Shown in pieces: positions 3,401 through 39,666 of a stretch of DNA of 45,931 bases (position 1 is the first letter of the stretch; every line of letters starts with the position of its first letter). The DNA comes from Octopus sinensis. Its lineage: Eukaryota. The position numbers and the translations under genes were made by a program. Where the stretch lies: the NCBI RefSeq assembly GCF_006345805.1, contig NW_021834685.1, positions 1-45,931 on the forward strand. The letters run 5' to 3'. Under the pieces are notes generated by a model that was given only the letters and a program-made list of their open reading frames with translations, was not told where the DNA came from and searched no databases.

Positions 3401-3438
3401 ATCAGTAAATTGTCATGAGTATAAATTATTATAAATAA

Positions 3439-3510
3439 TCCTCTATGGTCCAATGGCTAGGATATCCGCCTCTCACGTGGATGGTCCGGGTTCGATTACC
3501 GGTGGAGGAA
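3439..3510 (+). tRNA. tRNA-Glu(CTC): tRNA-Glu, anticodon CTC (one T-stem mismatch)
   Basis: 72 nt. Acceptor TCCTCTA/TGGAGGA, anticodon arm ATCCGC-CTCTCAC-GTGGAT, GGTTCGATT B box, TTTT downstream. T stem CCGGG/ACCGG has a G-A mismatch. Confidence 0.8.
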
Positions 3511-3634
3511 TATTTTATTTAAAAAAGTTGTAAGTGTTTTACTCTTAAATTTTACTTAATATGTAAATGCAGAATGAATTCCTACCTCAATCTCATTTTG
3601 TAATTTCACTCAACTTGATCTCAGAATTACATCT

Positions 3635-4055
3635 TTACACTGGTGTATCAGCCCTAGCTCGTTTGCAAGAAGGTCATCTCACGTGGATGGTCCGGGTTCG
3701 ATTCCCGGTGGAAGAGATCATACTTCCTTCTTCACTTTTACTGTCTGCAAACGATCTAGACACGTGATACCCATTTCAACAATAAAAATTTCCTCAGTCA
3801 CCTTATCGGGGCCCACAATATCGTGTTTTTGTGCTGGACAACAATTTAAATTTATACCTTCGAGTTCTCAGACACAAATTAAACTCTATTGGTTCGCAAC
3901 TTTCTGGACCCCCTCTAACAATACTTATTACAGTCCAGAGATGAAGGGACCTCAGCACCTCGTTATGCCTTCATGTGTAATCATGTTACAGCATATTTGT
4001 GGTTAAATGATTAACGGTCATTGCCTTACTTTTAAAGTGGTTACAATGTTTCCGT
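3635..4055 (-). mobile_element. RLE-type non-LTR retrotransposon remnant (zinc knuckle plus restriction-like endonuclease; R2/R4/NeSL/HERO-like group)
   Basis: Across frameshifts it reads TVNHLTT..ML*HDYT*RHNEVLRSLHL ... HDIVGPDKVTEEIFIVEMGITCLDRLQTVK..RKYDL | DLLANELGLIHQC. Interrupted by a tRNA fragment. Confidence 0.75.
3678..3711 (+). pseudogene. tRNA-Glu 3' half (anticodon to acceptor) embedded in the RLE element
   Basis: CTCACGTGGATGGTCCGGGTTCGATTCCCGGTGG matches the 3' half of 3439-3510, except that it has the canonical TTCCCGG T stem. Confidence 0.9.
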
Positions 4056-4139
4056 TAACTATTAAAAAAATTTTGTCTTGAAAGTATAAGAATAACCCTT
4101 CTGCTGAAGGAGAGTTATTCCCATACTTCAACCACGTAG

Positions 4140-5090
4140 ATGACGATACGTGCAGGTTGTCTTACTGCTAAAGAGAGTTTTCTGAAGGAATTTAAGTTGT
4201 TTTCTGTGCCAAGTACAAATGGAGAGAAATCTCGTCCATTATCTCGTTATTCTGATTTCCAGGTTAATCAGAAATTGATATATTAGCACATTGCAATTGA
4301 TAATAGAACAAAAATCAACGATATGCCGAAAGTTTTAGTTTCAAAGAATTCGCAATCTACATTACTAAAATGGTTGAGAGTTCCGATTCTCTTGTATTGA
4401 GAAAGCTGAATTGAAGATAAAATACTAGAAAGTTTGATATTTGCTGATTGAAATTAAACTCAACACAATTTGAATCTCTTTGGACGTAATAAATTATATA
4501 GTTTACTGTCACTTACGATTTATGATGCAAGACATAGCGAGGTTGCTACTGTAATCTCTAAATGCCTTGATTTTCAGGTTAATTATTAATTTTAACAAGT
4601 TTATTCTAAACTTGCGACTAAACCTGTATTTACACCTATTATTGCTTATGGACCGATACATCGTAGATCTCGTCAATTAAAGGCGATATCTTGCACAAAA
4701 TTAAAATTATTCCTGGGTTATTGTAAATTATTTATTTTTGAATATAATCAACAGATACTTGTTTTAATTGACTCTTTCTAAATTCGGTATAGTAGAAGGT
4801 GCCGTTAGCAAATCTACAATATGAGATTTGCCAAATCCTGAATAGAATCTTTTGCATAATTAATTCTTCCGATTATTCTACAAACCGAAATTGTAAAAAA
4901 ATTGTATCAAACATGATTTTATTTTCAGAAAGCTGTCTGATGCCGGAATGCAATTTTAGTCTTTTATGAGCAAATACATTTAGAAGGAAAAAAATTAACA
5001 CAAAAATATATTCTATTTTAATGTAGCTTCACGGATCAAAAGACAGTTACTTTTAAGAATGGCGATACTGGCCTTCTAAATAAACCAGAT
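4140..5090 (+). other. Possible decayed multi-exon host gene, unidentified
   Basis: Coding-like blocks separated by short GT..AG AT-rich gaps (e.g. gttaatcagaaattgatatattag). Contains stops and no recognised motif. Confidence 0.25.
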
Positions 5091-5425
5091 ACTAAATCAA
5101 AAATTTTAATTAACATTTTTAATAAATTTTATTGCTAAAAATAGTTTGGTTAGCAAGAATATGACAAATAATTAATGAATAGACTAAGGCAGTTTAGGTC
5201 TAAAACTGCTAGGTCTGGTTAACCATTTTCCGTGAATTTTTAAAGAAAATCGTGAAGCGCTACTCATTTTTGTTTTGACAATATGTTAGTTTGCGGAAAA
5301 TAGCGATATCTAAAATAATAAAGAGAAATTAATAATTTCAGATGTTTACAGAAGAGATCAACAAAAGAAGTTCAGGAAGAAAAATTAATTAGTCAAATTA
5401 TCTTTCAATTTAGACTCATAATTAG

Positions 5426-5497
5426 TTCTCTATGTTCCAGTGATAGAGATATCAGCCTCTCACGTAGATGGCCCGAGTTCGATTTCAAGTGGAGGAA
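5426..5497 (+). pseudogene. Degenerate tRNA-Glu(CTC) copy
   Basis: 72 nt colinear with 3439-3510, with broken D and T stems. Also shares about 115 nt of 3' flank with that gene. Confidence 0.85.
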
Positions 5498-6372
5498 TCT
5501 TGTATTAATCAAGTCGTTTGATGTTTGTTAATTAAGTTACATTCAAATGAAATTTACTTCATATGTGAATGCACTTCTCTCCATATCCTTTTGTCAGTTT
5601 ACTTAAGTTAATTTCAATGAAAGCTAAATGAGATGTATCGAAAGATTCCTTAGACTCAATGTATCGCCAATGTGGCTGCACTCTTGAAAGAGTTTGTTGT
5701 AATTGTTTCCATACGCACTCGGAAAAAGACCTTTTAACTTTTTAGAGCATCTCAGTAACAATCTTATGAGTCAAAAGCCTGACAATTAAGTCAACCCATT
5801 CTACATTTCTGGAATAAATAAAATAAAACTAATAAAACAAATTACAAATTGATTTAACAAATTTTTTTTATAAATAAAGTATTTATCATAAAAATTTCTC
5901 GATTCAAGGAAAAAATTAATTAGCATCCGATATTCCGTTAGTGCAAAAAATAATAATAATTCTAACTTCAAGTATTTAAATATAATGAAATACAAAATTT
6001 TGTCATAAAAAATCTGTTCTGCAGTAAAAGTAGAAAGGCGAAATATGAAATTGACAATTATTCGGTTAAAATTATTTTATTACTATATTTTTAATCTATG
6101 TCTGTTATTTGGTCTTCCACTTAAAAAACTAACCGTTTTAAAACTTATAAAGGATATAAATTCTATAGTTAAGAAAATGCATTTAAGTTTAATTAAATAT
6201 TATTTCTATCAAATATTATTTAAATAAATTACCATTTTACACGTCGACATTTTAATGTATACGCATGCCGATATAATGATTTAATTTAGGAAGAACTTGC
6301 TTTCTCGCAATGTTTTAATTTAAACAAAATAAACCTAAACTTAAACTATTTTAGTTAATAAGAAGATTGTCA

Positions 6373-6765
6373 ATGTCTGGCTGTTTCAACTCAATTACCG
6401 ATGGGAACCAAGTATCTACCATGTTGGCAAAAGAAACTCCAAACATAAAAATCCTCTATTTTACCGCACCGTATATTAGGACTAATTAATTACTCTAATT
6501 AGTTGGTGTGGTCCCTGCAGGCAGTTTAGTCCTGTCTTTGAGGAGTATCATCGGAATAATTCATTTTTTGACGTGGCCAAGATTGACATTGATAATTTTT
6601 CTGCTTTGGCAGAAACATATGAGGTTTTATATCTATAATTGGAATTTGAAAACTCAGATAACAAGCATTCCGACGGTCATTATCTTTAAGGGTAAAGACA
6701 AGGAGAAAACCATTATTGGTGCTACTGTCGACAAAGTCAAAAAGGCGTTAGAAAACTACTCTTAA
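6373..6765 (+). CDS. TXN: Thioredoxin, 108 aa, 3 exons (6373-6470, 6503-6623, 6658-6765)
   Basis: Spliced ORF MSGCFNS...LYFTAPWCGPCRQFSPVF...IDIDNFSALAETYEITSIPTVIIFKGK. WCGPC active site; GT-AG introns of 32 and 34 nt keep frame. Confidence 0.95.
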
Positions 6766-10900: not shown

Positions 10901-12323
10901 TGTTAGAATAAGATTTGTACAGATTGAATGCGCCTAGACGTGCAAAGGCATCTACGTTCACGTAACGAAGGTCACTACAGTAATACAGTTCTCTAATAAT
11001 TCAGAATATTTGAATGTACATAAACCATAGGTGATTCAACCCGTCAAATGAGTTGTTTAGTATTTTCTTTAGCGAGTCTCCTTCACAGTAACTAGTATTA
11101 ATAAAATGTTTATTACAATCTCTCTAAGTTTGTTAAATTCGAGAATATTTCTCCATTTGGAAATGAAACGTTGCTAATGATTTGAATTCTTGTTGTATGT
11201 CCCGCAGCATGTTCTCCATTGAATTCACAGTTTTGCAAAAGTCTGATTCAAATAAGCAATTTTTCAAAAACCGTTGTGTTAAGTCACAATTGCTTTGAAC
11301 CACTACGTGAACAAAAAGTAGGACAAGTGAAAGCATTCTAATTAAAGCTAATATTTTATTGCGAATAACTCATTGGTTAGACAACAAATAAATTAAAAAT
11401 TTTATTAACTAAATCCAAAACCGAAAATAATAAGAAATTAAGTAATTATTGATACTAGTTTTTGGAAATTTTTCTCATCTTGAGGGAACCTCATAACTCA
11501 TTATTTCCACATTTACTTTCATGCTCAGAGTCATTTATAATTTGTCAATTTGTTTCATCTGGGGTTTTCGCATTATTAGTTGGTCATTGCAAACAACTAT
11601 GTAATGACTTCTTTATTAGGCATATTAATTCGCATTTCTATGCTCCACCACGATGCTTTCTAGTGTCTTTTTCATTACAAGTGCCAGAATGTATGTTCTA
11701 GTCGGGACTTGAACAAATAATCTTTCGATATAGGAGATAGAACACTTTGTAATACTTTTAAACCTACTCCGTCCCTATTCACAAAAAGATAGAACACTAT
11801 TTTTTCATGATTGTCGTTTAAATAGTTCGGATACCAAGTTGATTGTCAAAAAAATTATTTCTAAAACAAATAGGACTGTAACTAAGATAATAGAATTACC
11901 CTGCTATTTTTAATGTCTGTCAAAGGAAGTATTTGCCATTACAAATCATCTTTTTTATCTATGGGTTTTGACTGTTGCATGGAGGTGTTGTCGAATGAAT
12001 AAATGGTTCCATATAAATTTAAAAGAAATTTTTGATATAAACACCCCATATGTAAAAATTAAATTGCCAAAATCTTATATTTCCAGCATGCAAATTAATA
12101 GTCCGAACAATTTTTAGTGAGGAAATTAAAAAAATTACAATATACTATCCATTTAACAAAATATTCATTTTAAAAAATCAAAATATTTTTTTACGTTTAT
12201 CTTTAAATAAATTTGTATTAGTGATTTTTTTGTATTAGTGAATATTTAAATATATTTAACAAATATTTAAATAACGAAATTAAATAATTTTCCCCCGCTA
12301 TTTGTTTGTGGTAAACATACAAT

Positions 12324-12989: not shown

Positions 12990-13980
12990 AAAATGAGAGT
13001 ATCGAAGCGGAAAAAAGCGGTCCAAAGCGACCGCGAACAGAAGCGTATGTGGTAGAACCTACTCAGGTAGCCTGTCAGAACCGTTGGCGTACCGTGGGGA
13101 AACCTAAACGTGTCGCTTGCCGATCTCTAACACTTTAGGTACTGGAAACTCGTCTTCGGAGCCGGTTGCACAGCCGAAGAAGACCGCCCCGCACCGGGGG
13201 TAGAATTACCTTCGGGGTTGTAGCTCGACTAGAGGTATTTTCCACCTGTGGAGAGCAGTGTTCCCTCTAAGCGAGTGGTAGCTATGCGCGCTGGGCACAT
13301 TGCATTGTGCAGCGTTATAAAGTGACGTGTGCAAAAAATTTTTGCTGCTCGAATTCTTCTTAATTTTATTATTGAATCTGAATGAATTTTATGGGTAATA
13401 TGTCTCTTCAGATAATCCAATTTCCATATATCCCTGGTTTTTCCACTCGCAAAATCACAAGTCGCTTTAGCGTCGCCACATATTTTACAAACAACTCCGC
13501 AGTCTTCGGAAAAACTAAAAATATCACCCAGTTGCACATGTTGGGGAATTTTTGAATCTGGTGTTAAGGTTTCGACGTACTCTATCAACCATTCCGGCTT
13601 AAAAGAAGGAGAATTTTTCTTAAGTCTCATATCAATATTATAGACACGTTTTCGTTTTGAAATGAAAATAAGAATATATAAATTCATATAAAAAATTAAA
13701 AAAAATAGCAATTTTTAATATTATACTTTCTACTGCGCAGAAAAAAATTTCGCTGCGCAGCAAGGTGCAAACTGCTGCGCGGCCGCGCACGCGCGCAGCT
13801 TAGAGGGAACACTGGTGGAGAGGCCTCAGTCATTAAAATCCGAGGCATTTTGGACTCGATACAGCCATATAAGCGGTATGAGGACTTTCCAGCTTCGGCA
13901 CCTCGCTCGTTATCTAGTCCTAAGACCTTCGCGCAGCCGTTAGACACGAATGTCCGGCCTCGATGCCTCCACATTTTTAT
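12990..13980 (-). mobile_element. Decayed LINE RT interrupted by the hAT at 13256-13814
   Basis: With the hAT removed it reads GHSCLTA, LYGCIES(K)NASD (IDFKxAFD-like) and LLFAVALD, across frameshifts. Confidence 0.5.
13256..13814 (-). mobile_element. Non-autonomous hAT (ZNF862/TTF zinc-finger type), 559 bp
   Basis: 17-bp TIR CAGTGTTCCCTCTAAGC at both ends. Perfect 8-bp TSD GTGGAGAG (13248-13255, 13815-13822). Retains EWL..VCKIC..WKLDYLKRH..H. Confidence 0.97.
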
Positions 13981-17822: not shown

Positions 17823-19004
<1,182 letters not shown>

Positions 19005-25624: not shown

Positions 25625-25696
25625 TCCCCGATAGTATAATGGTTAGTATGCCGCGTTGTCATCGCGGTGGCCCGGGTTCGATTCCCGGTCGGGGAG
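25625..25696 (+). tRNA. tRNA-Asp(GTC): tRNA-Asp, anticodon GTC
   Basis: 72 nt. Acceptor TCCCCGA/TCGGGGA, anticodon arm CCGCG-TTGTCAT-CGCGG, intact T arm, T-run terminator. Confidence 0.97.
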
Positions 25697-26624: not shown

Positions 26625-27135
26625 ACACGCTCTATCGTGTAGACCCAGTGCTGGCTGCATCCCGCGTCACGCGGCTCTTAACGACCTTATCAGAAGAGCC
26701 CTGGAAGTGGCCGGAATCCCCTCCCTGCTTGAACCCTCTGGGATCGATCGGGGGGACGGAAAAAGGCCTGACGGGATCACTGAGTTTCCCTTCAACAGGG
26801 GGAAGCCTCTTACCTGGGATACCACGTGTGTGGACTCTTTCTCGCCTCAGAACCTGCTGATGTCCGCATCCGCCCCTGGATCTATTGTCACAACCGCGGA
26901 ATGCAAAAAGATGCGGAAGTACTCCTCACTTACGGAGAAGTTCCAATTCCTTCCATTCGCGGTTGAGACTTCCGGTTCTTTAGACAGTAAGGCAATCAGC
27001 TTCGTTCAGGAGATCGGGTCCCGCATGTTTGCTATCACAGGCGACGCCCGCGAATCAAGATGGTTTTTCGAGCGGATATCCTTTTCGATAGTACGCTCTA
27101 ATTCTTTCTCGATCGCGTCGGCTTCCCGTCCATGA
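26625..27135 (+). mobile_element. CRE 3' end (RLE domain)
   Basis: [54 protein letters not shown]. Confidence 0.9.
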
Positions 27136-28856: not shown

Positions 28857-29949
28857 CAGTGTTCCCTCTAAGCTGCGCGCGTGCGCGGCCGCGCAGCAGT
28901 TTGCACCTTGCTGCGCAGCGAAATTTTTTTCTGCGCAGTAGAAAGTATAATATTAAAAATTGCTATTTTTTTTTAATTTTTTATATGAATTTATATATTC
29001 TTATTTTCATTTCAAAACGAAAACGTGTCTATAATATTGATATGAGACTTAAGAAAAATTCTCCTTCTTTTAAGCCGGAATGGTTGATAGAGTACGTCGA
29101 AACCTTAACACCAGATTCAAAAATTCCCCAACATGTGCAACTGGGTGATATTTTTAGTTTTTCCGAAGACTGCGGAGTTGAAAATTCTCATTGACAATGA
29201 AATTTACTGGAGTGACAGTGTGAAGATGTTGTTATCAACAACTGGTTATGGAGATACAAATACAGATGAAATCCTATGCTTTATCGAGCATGTTTATCTG
29301 CATTTACAAGAAAGATTTCCAGCTGACGAATTAAGAGAATGGGTAGCATTTGACACTCAAGCAATTCAAAATCAGACAAACTTTGAATTTGGAAAAGAGG
29401 AGATATTAAATTAACGAAAAAATATGAAAATTTACTCTCTTCAGAAGTCCCACTCATAAAACTGCAGTCGGAATATACAGATCTCAAGTTTATTTTAAAA
29501 GAAAAACTGCACTCTGGTGCTTTGAAAACATTTGAAGATGTAATTTACTATATACTAGCGGAGAAAAAATTTTCAGCCACTGCAACATTTGTGGATATTT
29601 GTGGCACATTTCAAGCGTCGAGTGCTGATGCTGAACGTGGATTTAGTTTGATGAACTGTATCAAAACTAAACTACGTAATAGACTTGAGATTGACCATTT
29701 GGAGATGATCATGCGAATCAAGTTCTATTTAACAAGTGGGAATACAGTGGATCTTGATCGAGTATACAAATTTTGGATACAAAATAAAAACAGAAGAGAA
29801 TATCCAATTGACTAGACCTATTTTTTTAACCATTGGTTTTTTAATTGTAAAATTTTTCCCCCCAAAATTTTTTGCACACGTCACTTTATAACGCTGCACA
29901 ATGCAATGTGCCCAGCGCGCATAGCTACCACTCGCTTGAGGGAACACTG
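28857..29949 (+). mobile_element. Non-autonomous hAT, 1093 bp, same family as 13256-13814
   Basis: Same TIR. Perfect TSD ATCATGAC (28849-28856, 29950-29957). Retains the dimerisation domain SSADAERGFSLMNCIKTKLRNRL. Confidence 0.97.
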
Positions 29950-32049: not shown

Positions 32050-32370
32050 TCGCCTTTGTTGTCCCAAATACATTTTCGATAGGATTTAAGTCAGGTGAAT
32101 AAGGAGGTAAAAACAAATACTAAACACTATGTGTTTCGAAAAAATTAACAAAATTTGAAGAATGATGAAATTTAACATTATCTAAAATTATCACAGAATC
32201 ATCAGTGAAAATTCCTTTTGTACAACATTCATTGATAAACTCAGTAAAAATAATTGTGCTGTACGCACCATCAATTATTTTAGAAAGTTCTATTCCCATT
32301 ATGGATATTATTGAACACAACGATATATTTTTTCCCTTTGATGCAGGTTGATATAGAATCGGATCATGAT
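32050..32370 (-). mobile_element. Tc1/IS630 transposase remnant
   Basis: VIILDNVKFHHS..YLFLPPYSPDLNPIENVFG. Confidence 0.9.
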
Positions 32371-32419
32371 TTACATTAATATAAAAAAGAATGAAATAAG
32401 AATCAACAACCAAAAGCAC

Positions 32420-32620
32420 AACAACACAAGTTGCATCCCAAATCAGGGACTTGCCTTTCCTGGAAGGGAAGGTAGTCATCCAGGACGCTTTCCAGCACTC
32501 CGACCGAGACCGACTGGCTCTAGAGTGGAGGGGAAACCTGCCGACTCTAGTGCCTTTTTGATGACGTCATTGAGGTGAGTGTGGCGAGGAATTCTGCCAG
32601 CACTCTTCTTGTACGATGAA
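32420..32620 (-). mobile_element. CRE RLE fragment
   Basis: [38 protein letters not shown] / [10 protein letters not shown]. Confidence 0.85.
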
Positions 32621-33045
32621 TATGCAAATTTGACAATTAAGTCATTTTCCCTGAACAATTTTGCATCTTCAATATCATTTTCATCAAGAAAATTCATATA
32701 TGCATTGTGTGTTATATTTTTTGAATTTGTCTTATATTTTGTGAATTCGTAAAAATTAATAATGGACGCATTTTTGAACAATGCCGCCAGTTCTATATCA
32801 TGTTGTAAATTAATGAGTTCTAGTTGAAACTTTGCAGGCGCATCCTTAATTTCCACGCTGAATGGAGTTGCGAATATTTTCATTAAAGGAAGGAATTCTT
32901 TAAAATTCTAAAAATTAAATTTATATAAATGTACCCCAAAACGTGCTTCAAATTGATTAATGAAATCACCAATTATGGATATGTTTAACCTTAAGAATGA
33001 ATAATTGAATTTAAAAATCCTGGGGGCTGCATTTGAGAACCGCTG
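32620..33045 (-). mobile_element. hAT (Charlie/SPIN-like) fragment with 5' TIR, inserted in a CRE
   Basis: TIR CAGCGGTTCTCAAA ends at 33045 beside [26 protein letters not shown]. Confidence 0.85.
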
Positions 33046-39115: not shown

Positions 39116-39666
39116 GAACACACCAGTGCCGCTGCGGTTTAAGAGTGGATTCATTTGGCCATCATCCCCTCTCCTGCTCACGTAGTGCCGGACGTTTCCC
39201 ACGACACGCCGCCATCAACGACACCGTGAGCCGTGCCCTAACGACGGCGGGGTTTCCTAATGAGCTCGAACCAGTCGGGCTCGACAGAGGCGACGGTAAG
39301 CGCCCGGATGGCATGTCAATCTTCCCGTTTGAAAAGGGGAAATGCCTTATCTGGGACGCCACCTATTCCGACACTTTCTCCGCCAATAATCTAATTGTCT
39401 CCGCTGCGGAACCGGGCTCAGTTGCAAAGCAGGCGGAACTAACAAAACAGGAGAAGTACCGGGTCCTGGCAAAGAATCACCAATTCACTGCAGTCGCGAT
39501 GGAAACCTCTGGAGTCATCGGCCCGCAGACGCTATCGTTTCTCCGCCGCCTTGGATGTAAGCTCGTGGTTTCCACGAAAGATCCCAACGAGTCGATCAGA
39601 CTTTTTCAAAGGATCACATTGGCCATCATGCGCGGGAATTGCCAGTCGATCCGCTGCGCATTTTAA
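39116..39666 (+). mobile_element. CRE 3' end with open zinc-knuckle and RLE frame
   Basis: HQCRCGLRVDSFGHHPLSC..RHAAIND..LEPVGLDRGDGKRPDG..WDAT..METSG..QRITLAIMRGN, with no stop over 173 codons. Confidence 0.92.

What the first reader, a model, noticed from the sequence alone, without database searches (positions are those of the whole stretch)
3667..3721. tRNA-Glu 3' half, starting at the anticodon, inserted into an RLE retrotransposon with a target-duplication-like repeat
Seen: on the minus strand the endonuclease motif RKYDLLANELG is split as RKYDL|34-nt insert|DLLANELG. The insert (3678-3711) is the tRNA-Glu 3' half starting at the CTC anticodon, antisense to the element. It is flanked by AAGAAGGTCAT and AAGAGATCAT. 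It carries the canonical T stem, unlike the full gene 170 bp upstream. Established: stress nucleases cleave tRNAs in the anticodon loop, and non-LTR machinery can copy cellular RNAs by TPRT with TSDs. Inference: this may be a retroposed tRNA half, or a trace of a tRNA-targeting or tRNA-capturing retroelement system.
Basis: partly seen in the sequence, partly recalled or inferred. Interest (0 to 1): 0.75.

Follow-up and report, generated by a model that had tools for sequence, protein, structure and literature searches.

The report
tRNA-Glu fragment inside dead retrotransposon
A 34-base piece of a glutamate tRNA, flanked by a short duplication, really is inserted into a decayed fragment of an R2-like jumping gene in an octopus-like genome, but it looks like a one-off copying accident next to a tRNA gene rather than a new tRNA-capturing system.

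Summary
On the minus strand, 4199-3621 is a decayed copy of an R2-like (RT + CCHC + restriction-like endonuclease) non-LTR retrotransposon, truncated at both ends. Its closest relatives are Octopus sinensis elements. Five related DNA copies and 75 of 85 related proteins carry RKYDLLANELG uninterrupted. The window has exactly 44 extra bases: 34 nt of antisense tRNA-Glu(CTC), positions 34-67 (3678-3711), plus an imperfect 10/11-nt duplication of the empty-site sequence ATGACCTTCTT.

There is no CCA and no A tail. The target end TTCTT-3' can pair with the tRNA's AGGAA. A near-identical tRNA-Glu gene (33/34) lies 167 bp away in the same orientation, and its 3' flank joins the truncated end of the retrotransposon only about 50 bp from the insert.

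My best reading (0.45) is local microhomology-mediated template switching that copied the neighbouring gene. The main rival (0.35) is target-primed retroposition of a tRNA-Glu 3' fragment, like a mammalian tailless retropseudogene. The sequence alone cannot separate the two.

Nothing supports a tRNA-targeting or tRNA-capturing retroelement system. The host copy is dead, other family copies lack the insert, and none of them sits beside a tRNA-Glu gene. This is an ordinary small structural mutation of modest interest.

The parts
3439..3510 (+). tRNA-Glu(CTC) gene, anticodon at 3472-3474. It has a G53.A61 mismatch in the T stem and B box (GGTTCGATTAC), so it is probably impaired. It is the candidate DNA donor of the fragment.
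   Evidence: ARAGORN; Rfam 49.9 bits (non-standard pair flagged); sequence.
3431..3623 (+). tRNA-Glu 'unit': the gene with 8 nt upstream and about 113 nt of 3' flank. It is homologous to a second, degenerate unit at 5418-5616.
   Evidence: blastn; MAFFT and local alignments; 145 of 210 columns identical.
3621..4199 (-). Decayed fragment of an R2-like (CCHC + RLE) non-LTR retrotransposon, truncated at both ends. It corresponds to P0002 residues about 294-475, has several stops and frameshifts, and lacks about 300 nt of the ORF's 3' part.
   Evidence: tblastn and blastx; blastn to O. sinensis loci, 76% identity; 3' part present in L001 and L005; junction mapped at 3621-3626.
3667..3677 (.). Duplication copy 1, AAGAAGGTCAT (ATGACCTTCTT in element sense). 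It matches the family's empty-site sequence and lies downstream of the insert in element sense.
   Evidence: Alignment to L001-L004.
3678..3711 (+). Inserted tRNA-Glu sequence, positions 34-67, from the first anticodon base to the start of the 3' acceptor strand. It has the standard T arm and an intact B box (GGTTCGATTCC). One base on each side (T3677, A3712) is shared with the target.
   Evidence: blastn, E = 8e-12; 33/34 identical to the gene; absent from all relatives.
3712..3721 (.). Duplication copy 2, AAGAGATCAT: an imperfect copy of AAGAAGGTCAT with one substitution and one 1-nt deletion. Its minus-strand 3' end ...TCTT is the putative primer that pairs with tRNA AGGAA.
   Evidence: Alignment; edit distance 2, background frequency 0.19%.
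5418..5616 (+). Degenerate second tRNA-Glu unit. Its tRNA body at 5426-5497 is 57/72 identical to the gene and is not called as a tRNA. It shows where the unit's flank homology ends.
   Evidence: It is not detected by ARAGORN or Rfam.

Best explanation
This is a single small structural mutation in junk DNA, made by microhomology-mediated template switching during replication or break repair (serial replication slippage, FoSTeS/MMBIR or polymerase-theta-type synthesis).

Inferred steps:
1. A growing minus-strand 3' end inside the dead retrotransposon fragment ended in ...ATGACCTTCTT-3'.
2. It left its template and annealed through TTCTT to AGGAA, the last acceptor bases of the tRNA-Glu gene about 206 bp further along the same template strand.
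3. It copied 34 nt, from position 67 back to the anticodon base 34.
4. It returned to the original template 11 nt behind the point where it had left. That return created the 11-nt duplication.

The same episode, or the same fragile tRNA-gene neighbourhood, also produced the junction 50 bp away, where the truncated 3' end of the retrotransposon is fused to the tRNA gene's 3' flank. The C-to-A change at tRNA position 61 in the gene, and the two changes in one duplication copy, arose later or through error-prone synthesis.

Shown: the insertion, its exact content, the duplication, the microhomology, the nearby donor and the adjacent junction. Inferred: that the template was DNA, that the two junctions belong to one event, and the order of events.
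For: - A donor exists in cis. The tRNA-Glu gene at 3439-3510 has the same orientation, is offset by 206 bp, and is 33/34 identical over the insert.
- The only other tRNA-Glu-like sequence I found in the window, among about 47 kb of non-redundant O. sinensis DNA searched as well, is the degenerate copy 2 kb away. Landing beside a cognate gene by chance is therefore unlikely.
- At the 3' junction the target TTCTT-3' pairs with gene AGGAA (3506-3510) through four Watson-Crick pairs and one G.T. The product keeps the target's base at the mismatch (A3713). The other junction has 1 nt of microhomology.
- There is no CCA, no A tail and no untemplated bases.
- The retrotransposon fragment is truncated at its 3' end, which target-primed insertion does not produce. 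That end (3621-3626) abuts the end of the tRNA unit's flank homology (3623), so a rearrangement junction with the same tRNA-Glu unit lies about 50 bp from the insert.
- Tailless retroposition of small RNAs has been tied to relaxed L1 systems of therian mammals and the anole, and was not found in chicken or platypus (PMC5322556). This lowers the prior for the RNA route in a cephalopod.
Against: - A clean 10/11-nt flanking duplication is the classic signature of staggered nicks in target-primed reverse transcription. Under template switching it needs a second, backward switch.
- The copied tract ends exactly in the anticodon loop, where tRNA halves are cut. Template switching gives no reason for that; by chance it would happen about 10% of the time.
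- The insert carries the universally conserved C61, while the proposed donor has A61. The donor must therefore have mutated after the event, or another copy served as template.
- A donor about 200 bp away is at the long end for polymerase-theta-type templated insertions.
- That the two junctions share one origin is an inference.
Confidence: 0.45

Rival explanations
1. Retroposition of a tRNA-Glu 3' fragment by target-primed reverse transcription, in the manner of a 'tailless retropseudogene'. A LINE endonuclease nicked the minus strand at ...ATGACCTTCTT^GCAAAC. The TTCTT-3' end annealed to AGGAA near the 3' end of a tRNA-Glu(CUC), either a pre-cleaved 3' half or a full or nascent tRNA. Reverse transcriptase copied back to C34 and ran off or stopped. 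A second nick 11 nt away produced the duplication. A local variant uses nascent transcripts of the adjacent gene.
For: - The order duplication-cDNA-duplication, with the complement of the RNA's 3' end next to the upstream copy on the nicked strand, is exactly that of target-primed reverse transcription.
- The 10/11-nt duplication has a background frequency of 0.19%.
- There is no tail, and the target is complementary to the RNA at the priming site, as described for tailless retropseudogenes (2-18 nt; PMC5322556).
- The 5' end falls at the first anticodon base, in the loop where tRNA halves are generated.
- The insert has the standard C61 expected of the functional tRNA pool, unlike the neighbouring gene.
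Against: - No CCA or other mark of RNA origin is present.
- The T-loop A58 is copied faithfully, although mature eukaryotic tRNAs often carry m1A58, which blocks or miscodes reverse transcription (general knowledge).
- A cognate gene 167 bp away in the same orientation would be a coincidence, unless local transcripts were used.
- The nick site TTCTT/GC is not the TT/WAAAA of the known system.
- Known tailless copies usually keep the RNA's 5' end and end in loops, and are tied to relaxed L1.
- The duplication copies differ at 2 of 11 positions while the insert is unchanged.
Confidence: 0.35
2. This is the remnant of a larger insertion: a whole tRNA-Glu gene, or a tRNA-Glu-derived SINE, that entered the retrotransposon copy and was later trimmed by deletions.
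For: - A roughly 200-bp tRNA-Glu unit occurs twice within 2 kb with sharp homology boundaries.
- The old retrotransposon copy is deletion-rich: 486 window nt align to 538 nt of L004.
Against: - Deletions would have had to remove everything except 34 nt while leaving the duplicated 11-mers directly abutting both ends and restoring the reading frame of RKYDLLANELG.
- The unit is absent from about 47 kb of O. sinensis DNA, so it is not an abundant SINE.
Confidence: 0.05
3. This is the trace of a dedicated system in which the RLE retrotransposon family targets tRNA-Glu genes or captures tRNA halves.
For: Only the co-location of a retrotransposon fragment, a tRNA-Glu gene 111 bp from its end, and a tRNA-Glu fragment inside it.
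Against: - The local copy is dead and truncated at both ends.
- The insert is antisense and interrupts the endonuclease domain.
- 75 of 85 homologous proteins and five DNA copies lack any insert.
- No tRNA-Glu sequence lies near the other five family loci.
- The element's end next to the tRNA gene is a truncation, not an insertion end.
Confidence: 0.03
4. The resemblance is due to chance, or the 34 nt are an original part of the retrotransposon family.
For: None beyond the short length of the tract.
Against: - The match to the gene has E = 8e-12 within the window.
- The tract is absent from all related DNA copies and proteins.
- It includes a complete T arm and B box.
Confidence: 0.01

Closest known systems
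Tailless retropseudogenes (Schmitz et al. 2004; Noll et al. 2015, PMC5322556)
   Same: The insert is a small-RNA-derived tract without an A tail. It is flanked by a target-site duplication and is truncated at the 3' end. The target is complementary to the RNA at the priming point.
   Different: The known cases depend on relaxed L1 elements of therian mammals and the anole, with a TT/WAAAA target. They usually keep the RNA's 5' end and stop in loops. Here the host is a cephalopod-like genome, the nick site would be TTCTT/GC, both ends of the tRNA are missing, the 3' end lies in the acceptor stem, and a cognate gene sits 167 bp away.
Templated insertions from microhomology-mediated template switching (serial replication slippage, FoSTeS/MMBIR, polymerase-theta end joining)
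   Same: The inserted tract copies a nearby sequence in cis in direct orientation. There is microhomology at the junctions, a small local duplication, and a second breakpoint close by.
   Different: Thirty-four nt copied from about 200 bp away, with a neat 11-nt duplication, is at the large and tidy end for such events. The donor differs from the copy at one base.
R2 and other restriction-like-endonuclease (RLE) non-LTR retrotransposons (the host element)
   Same: Relatives have RT followed by a CCHC knuckle and a PD-(D/E)xK nuclease with RHNEV, KPD, E and K..KY motifs. The predicted fold matches the R2 cryo-EM structures first.
   Different: No sequence-level hit to R2 or to a Pfam nuclease domain. 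The target specificity is unknown. O. sinensis copies end at the stop codon with no recognisable 3' UTR. The family is shared with microsporidia.
tRNA-gene-targeting retrotransposons (Dictyostelium TRE elements, yeast Ty1/Ty3)
   Same: A retroelement fragment lies about 110 bp downstream of a tRNA gene.
   Different: Those families show recurrent insertion at a fixed distance, with intact element ends. Here there is a single locus, a truncated end, and no tRNA association at five other loci.

Membership tests
RLE-type (R2-superfamily) non-LTR retrotransposon (host element) | Reverse transcriptase domain N-terminal to the nuclease region | tested here: met
   Relatives P0002 and P0038 hit Pfam RVT_1. 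The window copy itself is truncated at the 5' end and lacks the RT.
RLE-type (R2-superfamily) non-LTR retrotransposon (host element) | C-terminal CCHC knuckle plus a PD-(D/E)xK restriction-like endonuclease fold | tested here: met
   The 30-sequence alignment keeps H109/C110, H119, C124, RHNEV 135-139, P192, E208 and K224/K227/Y228 invariant or nearly so. The AlphaFold model has pLDDT about 90 over the nuclease. The top seven Foldseek PDB hits are R2 proteins (E 1e-7 to 8e-6), followed by cap-snatching PD-(D/E)xK nucleases.
RLE-type (R2-superfamily) non-LTR retrotransposon (host element) | Sequence-specific target site | not tested
   Only the 3' ends of two O. sinensis copies were compared, and their flanks differ. 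A whole genome is needed.
Tailless retropseudogene | Small-RNA-derived copy without an oligo(A) tail, flanked by a target-site duplication | tested here: met
   No A run follows position 3711. The duplication is 10/11 nt and imperfect.
Tailless retropseudogene | Target site complementary to the RNA at the internal priming site | tested here: met
   TTCTT-3' pairs with AGGAA through four Watson-Crick pairs and one G.T.
Tailless retropseudogene | 3' truncation in a loop or single-stranded A-rich region, and an L1-type TT/WAAAA target | tested here: not met
   The 3' end lies in the acceptor stem and the nick site would be TTCTT/GC. Criteria are from PMC5322556.
Tailless retropseudogene | Demonstrable RNA origin (CCA, processed ends, location unlinked to the source gene) | tested here: not met
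   No CCA is present. A 33/34-identical gene lies 167 bp away in the same orientation.
Templated insertion by microhomology-mediated template switching | Donor sequence nearby in cis | tested here: met
   3472-3505 matches 3678-3711 at 33/34, in direct orientation, with an offset of 206 bp.
Templated insertion by microhomology-mediated template switching | Microhomology at both switch points | tested here: inconclusive
   Five nt with one G.T at the first switch; only 1 nt at the return switch.
Templated insertion by microhomology-mediated template switching | Copy identical to the donor at the time of the event | not testable with these tools
   There is one difference (C61 in the insert, A61 in the gene). 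Orthologous loci are needed to date it, and exact-protein look-ups for this locus found nothing.
tRNA-gene-targeting retrotransposon | Recurrent association of family copies with tRNA genes at a characteristic distance | tested here: not met
   Loci L001, L002 and L005 have no tRNA. L003 and L004, which are one duplicated locus, have a tRNA-Ile about 3.5 kb away. No tRNA-Glu sequence is present in any of them. The sample is small.
Stress-type tRNA 3' half (tiRNA) as source molecule | Fragment runs from the anticodon loop to the mature 3' CCA end | tested here: not met
   The start at C34 fits. The last 5 nt and the CCA are absent, although internal priming could explain that. RNA data are not available.

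The most novel reading that the evidence does not exclude
The insert is a genuine retrocopy of a tRNA-Glu 3' half, or of a nascent tRNA-Glu transcript used locally. It would have been made by target-primed reverse transcription in a cephalopod. That would place tailless small-RNA retroposition outside the relaxed-L1 lineages of mammals and lizards, and would suggest that anticodon-cleaved tRNA halves can serve as templates.
Probability: 0.3. Interest if true: 0.45.

Novelty: new member of a known kind. Interest (0 to 1): 0.22.

Why it matters
As it stands, this is a tidy example of how small structural mutations arise next to tRNA genes. It is also a caution: a flanking duplication plus a tRNA fragment does not by itself prove retroposition when a donor gene lies 200 bp away.

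It would matter more if a genome-wide census showed many tRNA 3' fragments that start at the anticodon loop and carry flanking duplications. That would extend tailless retroposition to molluscs and would implicate tRNA halves as templates.

The host element family is a minor by-product of some interest for transposon classification and horizontal transfer. It is R2-like in fold, unrecognised by Pfam nuclease models, and shared by Octopus and microsporidia.

Tried and rejected
- A word-indexed protein search with the repaired 67-aa peptide found nothing.
The exact 49-aa window ORF then gave the one key hit.
- Pfam on the window peptide found no family.
- A PDB sequence search with P0002 found no R2 hit. 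The relationship showed only at fold level.
- Attempts to fetch the same or an orthologous locus by exact ORF look-ups all failed.
- A neighbouring thioredoxin-like gene also failed as an anchor, because its best relatives are only 37-49% identical.
- A metagenome scan for the tRNA-Glu 3' half found no match.
- A B-box scan for other orphan tRNA pieces in the window gave only the known sites plus two chance matches without a T stem.
- I rejected the idea that the retrotransposon piece at 11631-11753 is the missing 3' part of this copy. It belongs to another subfamily and lies on the wrong side.
- I rejected the idea that the roughly 200-bp tRNA-Glu unit is an abundant SINE, because it is absent from about 47 kb of O. 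sinensis DNA.
- I looked for flanking duplications around the full tRNA genes and found none.
- The microsporidian transposon paper (PMC4202319) did not classify this family.

Full report
**What is in the sequence.** The window is AT-rich eukaryotic DNA (23-42% GC) full of transposon debris. It shares repeats at 93% identity with Octopus sinensis contigs. ARAGORN and Rfam find a tRNA-Glu(CTC) gene at 3439-3510 (+) and a tRNA-Asp at 25625-25696. Rfam's alignment of the Glu gene flags a non-standard pair in the T stem, G53.A61. C61 is a near-universal tRNA and B-box base (established knowledge), so this gene is probably impaired. BLAST of the region against the window finds two more tRNA-Glu sequences. 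One is 3677-3715, 37/39 identical to gene positions 33-71. The other is a degenerate full copy at 5418-5506 that no tRNA finder calls.

**The host element.** On the minus strand the region reads ...EIFIVEMGITCLDRLQTVKVKK / RRKYDL / insert / DDLLANELGLIHQCK.... A word-indexed search with the repaired peptide found nothing. An exhaustive HMMER search with the exact 49-aa ORF found one protein, O. sinensis LOC115228408 (P0001). It carries ...IIEVGITCLDRLTTVEVEKKRKYDLLANELGLMHRCK... uninterrupted.

Searching with P0001 gave 85 homologues in O. sinensis, in microsporidia (Hamiltosporidium, Vairimorpha, Nosema) and in metagenomes. Of these, 75 contain the motif uninterrupted. I did not inspect the other 10 individually; the two I printed end before this region.

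Relatives have an RT domain upstream. The alignment conserves a CCHC knuckle, RHNEV, KPD, E and K..KY. The AlphaFold model of P0001 (pLDDT about 90 over the nuclease) matches seven R2 retrotransposon structures first (E 1e-7 to 8e-6) and then PD-(D/E)xK cap-snatching nucleases. 'RLE retrotransposon' is therefore right at the level of architecture and fold, although neither Pfam nor a PDB sequence search sees it.

The window copy spans 4199-3621 and corresponds to P0002 residues about 294-475. It has several stops and frameshifts. It lacks both the RT and the last ~300 nt of the ORF, which L001 and L005 retain. It is a dead fragment truncated at both ends.

**The empty site.** The closest DNA relatives are L003/L004 (the P0023 locus). 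They align to window 4199-3714 at 76% identity and then, with no gap on their side, to 3669-3633. The window therefore has exactly 44 extra bases. The multiple alignment of five copies gives the empty site AAGT-ATGACCT(C/T)CTT-GCAAAC. In element sense the window reads:

AAGT-ATGATCTCTT-[CCACCGGGAATCGAACCCGGACCATCCACGTGAG]-ATGACCTTCTT-GCAAAC

So 34 nt of antisense tRNA-Glu (positions 67 back to 34) sit between two copies of the 11-mer. The upstream copy differs by one substitution and one 1-nt deletion. Only 0.19% of window positions show a repeat this good at this spacing.

One ambiguity remains. The tRNA match can be extended to 39 nt with two mismatches, which would shrink the duplication to 5 nt. 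The bases after TGGA fit the target (8 of 9, with one gap) far better than the tRNA (2 of 4, then nothing), so I keep the 34 + 10/11 parse.

**Junction details.** There is no CCA, no A run and no untemplated base. The minus-strand end of the upstream duplication copy, TTCTT-3', can pair with AGGAA. These are the last four acceptor bases plus the discriminator (gene 3506-3510), giving four Watson-Crick pairs and one G.T. The product keeps the target's base at the wobble position (A3713). The next bases synthesised are exactly the complement of the tRNA from position 67 downwards. At the other end, one base (T3677) is shared between tRNA T33 and the target.

The tRNA-Glu gene is part of a roughly 190-bp unit (3431-3623: 8 nt upstream, the gene, and about 113 nt of 3' flank). 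This unit is homologous to the degenerate copy at 5418-5616. That homology stops at 3623. Homology to the retrotransposon starts at 3621-3626. The truncated 3' end of the retrotransposon fragment is therefore fused to the 3' flank of the tRNA-Glu unit, about 50 bp from the 34-nt insert. Both tRNA-Glu sequences have the same orientation. No homology resumes beyond either element.

The unit is absent from about 47 kb of non-redundant O. sinensis DNA, so it is not an abundant SINE. The five other loci of the family contain no tRNA-Glu sequence. The only tRNA there is a tRNA-Ile about 3.5 kb away in one duplicated locus.

**Mechanism.** Two readings fit the anatomy.

(a) *Local DNA template switching.* A nascent 3' end ...CTTCTT slips about 206 nt forward on the same template to AGGAA in the tRNA gene. 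It copies 34 nt, then slips back 11 nt behind its departure point. This explains four things without coincidence: the proximity and shared orientation of the donor, the microhomology, the absence of any RNA mark, and the presence of a second junction with the same tRNA unit 50 bp away.

(b) *Target-primed reverse transcription of a tRNA-Glu 3' fragment.* This explains the neat duplication and the start at the first anticodon base, where tRNA halves are cut. It also explains the standard C61 where the neighbouring gene has A61. It closely parallels the tailless retropseudogenes of Schmitz and Noll: no tail, a target-site duplication, and a target complementary to the RNA at an internal priming site (PMC5322556). 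But those depend on relaxed L1 elements, use TT/WAAAA targets, and were not found in chicken or platypus. And a retrocopy landing 167 bp from a cognate gene in the same orientation needs either luck or the use of local nascent transcripts.

A rough comparison of expected genome-wide frequencies suggests the two are of the same order. This estimate is my own and uses no measured rates for octopus. The general occurrence of local templated events and the adjacent breakpoint tip it slightly towards (a). I put (a) at 0.45 and (b) at 0.35, and the sequence alone cannot settle it.

I give little weight to three other readings:
- A trimmed larger insertion (0.05).
- A dedicated tRNA-targeting or tRNA-capturing system (0.03).
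- Chance resemblance, or the 34 nt being native to the family (refuted).

**Verdict.** The inference of an insertion with a duplicated target is right, and the RLE label is right. Retroposition of a tRNA half remains possible but unproven. A tRNA-targeting or capturing system is not supported. This is one more instance of known kinds of small structural mutation, so interest is low to modest. I could not retrieve the orthologous locus or any genome-wide data. The decisive tests are listed separately.

Noticed in passing
window 6376-6765 (+): A thioredoxin-like coding sequence with a WCGPC motif. It reads through only if two intron-like blocks of about 32-34 nt are skipped, which is very short for an animal intron. 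Pfam Thioredoxin scores 2.7e-18. The best database relatives are only 37-49% identical and several are bacterial.
   Followed up: partly
window 5418-5616 (+): A degenerate second copy of the tRNA-Glu unit (gene plus about 110 nt of 3' flank), about 2 kb from the first. It has G15-C48 where the called gene has A15-T48, which is a covarying tertiary pair. No tRNA finder calls it.
   Followed up: yes
window 3439-3510 (+): The called tRNA-Glu gene has A at the near-invariant position 61. This gives a G53.A61 mismatch and a weakened B box, so it may be a pseudogene.
   Followed up: partly
window 11631-11753 (-): A separate short C-terminal fragment of another subfamily of the same R2-like superfamily (46-51% aa identity to P0017 and P0057).
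   Followed up: partly
window 26707-27135 (+), 39145-39666 (+), 32120-32883 (-): Three ORFs share a different nuclease-like C-terminus (RH..ND ... KRPDG ... WD.T ... K..KY), probably from another retroelement family. They have no Pfam hit.
   Followed up: no
P0001-P0085 (relatives of the host element): The host retrotransposon family is shared by Octopus sinensis and microsporidia (Hamiltosporidium, Vairimorpha, Nosema) at 40-50% aa identity. This hints at horizontal transfer between microsporidia and animals.
   Followed up: no
L001 about 5013; L002 about 5697: Two 98%-identical O. sinensis copies lose homology exactly at the ORF stop (...GGATTA). The element therefore seems to have no 3' UTR or tail, and the last base of the stop codon comes from the flank.
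   Followed up: partly
window 13229-13711 (-) and 28859-29194 (+): The same ~90-aa N-terminal peptide is encoded in two ORFs in inverted orientation 15 kb apart. This looks like a repeated element or an inverted duplication.
   Followed up: no
window 18433-18771 (-): An exon-like ORF with a JAB/MPN metalloprotease domain (Rpn11/CSN5-like, Pfam 1.2e-15). It is either a host gene or a pseudogene.
   Followed up: no
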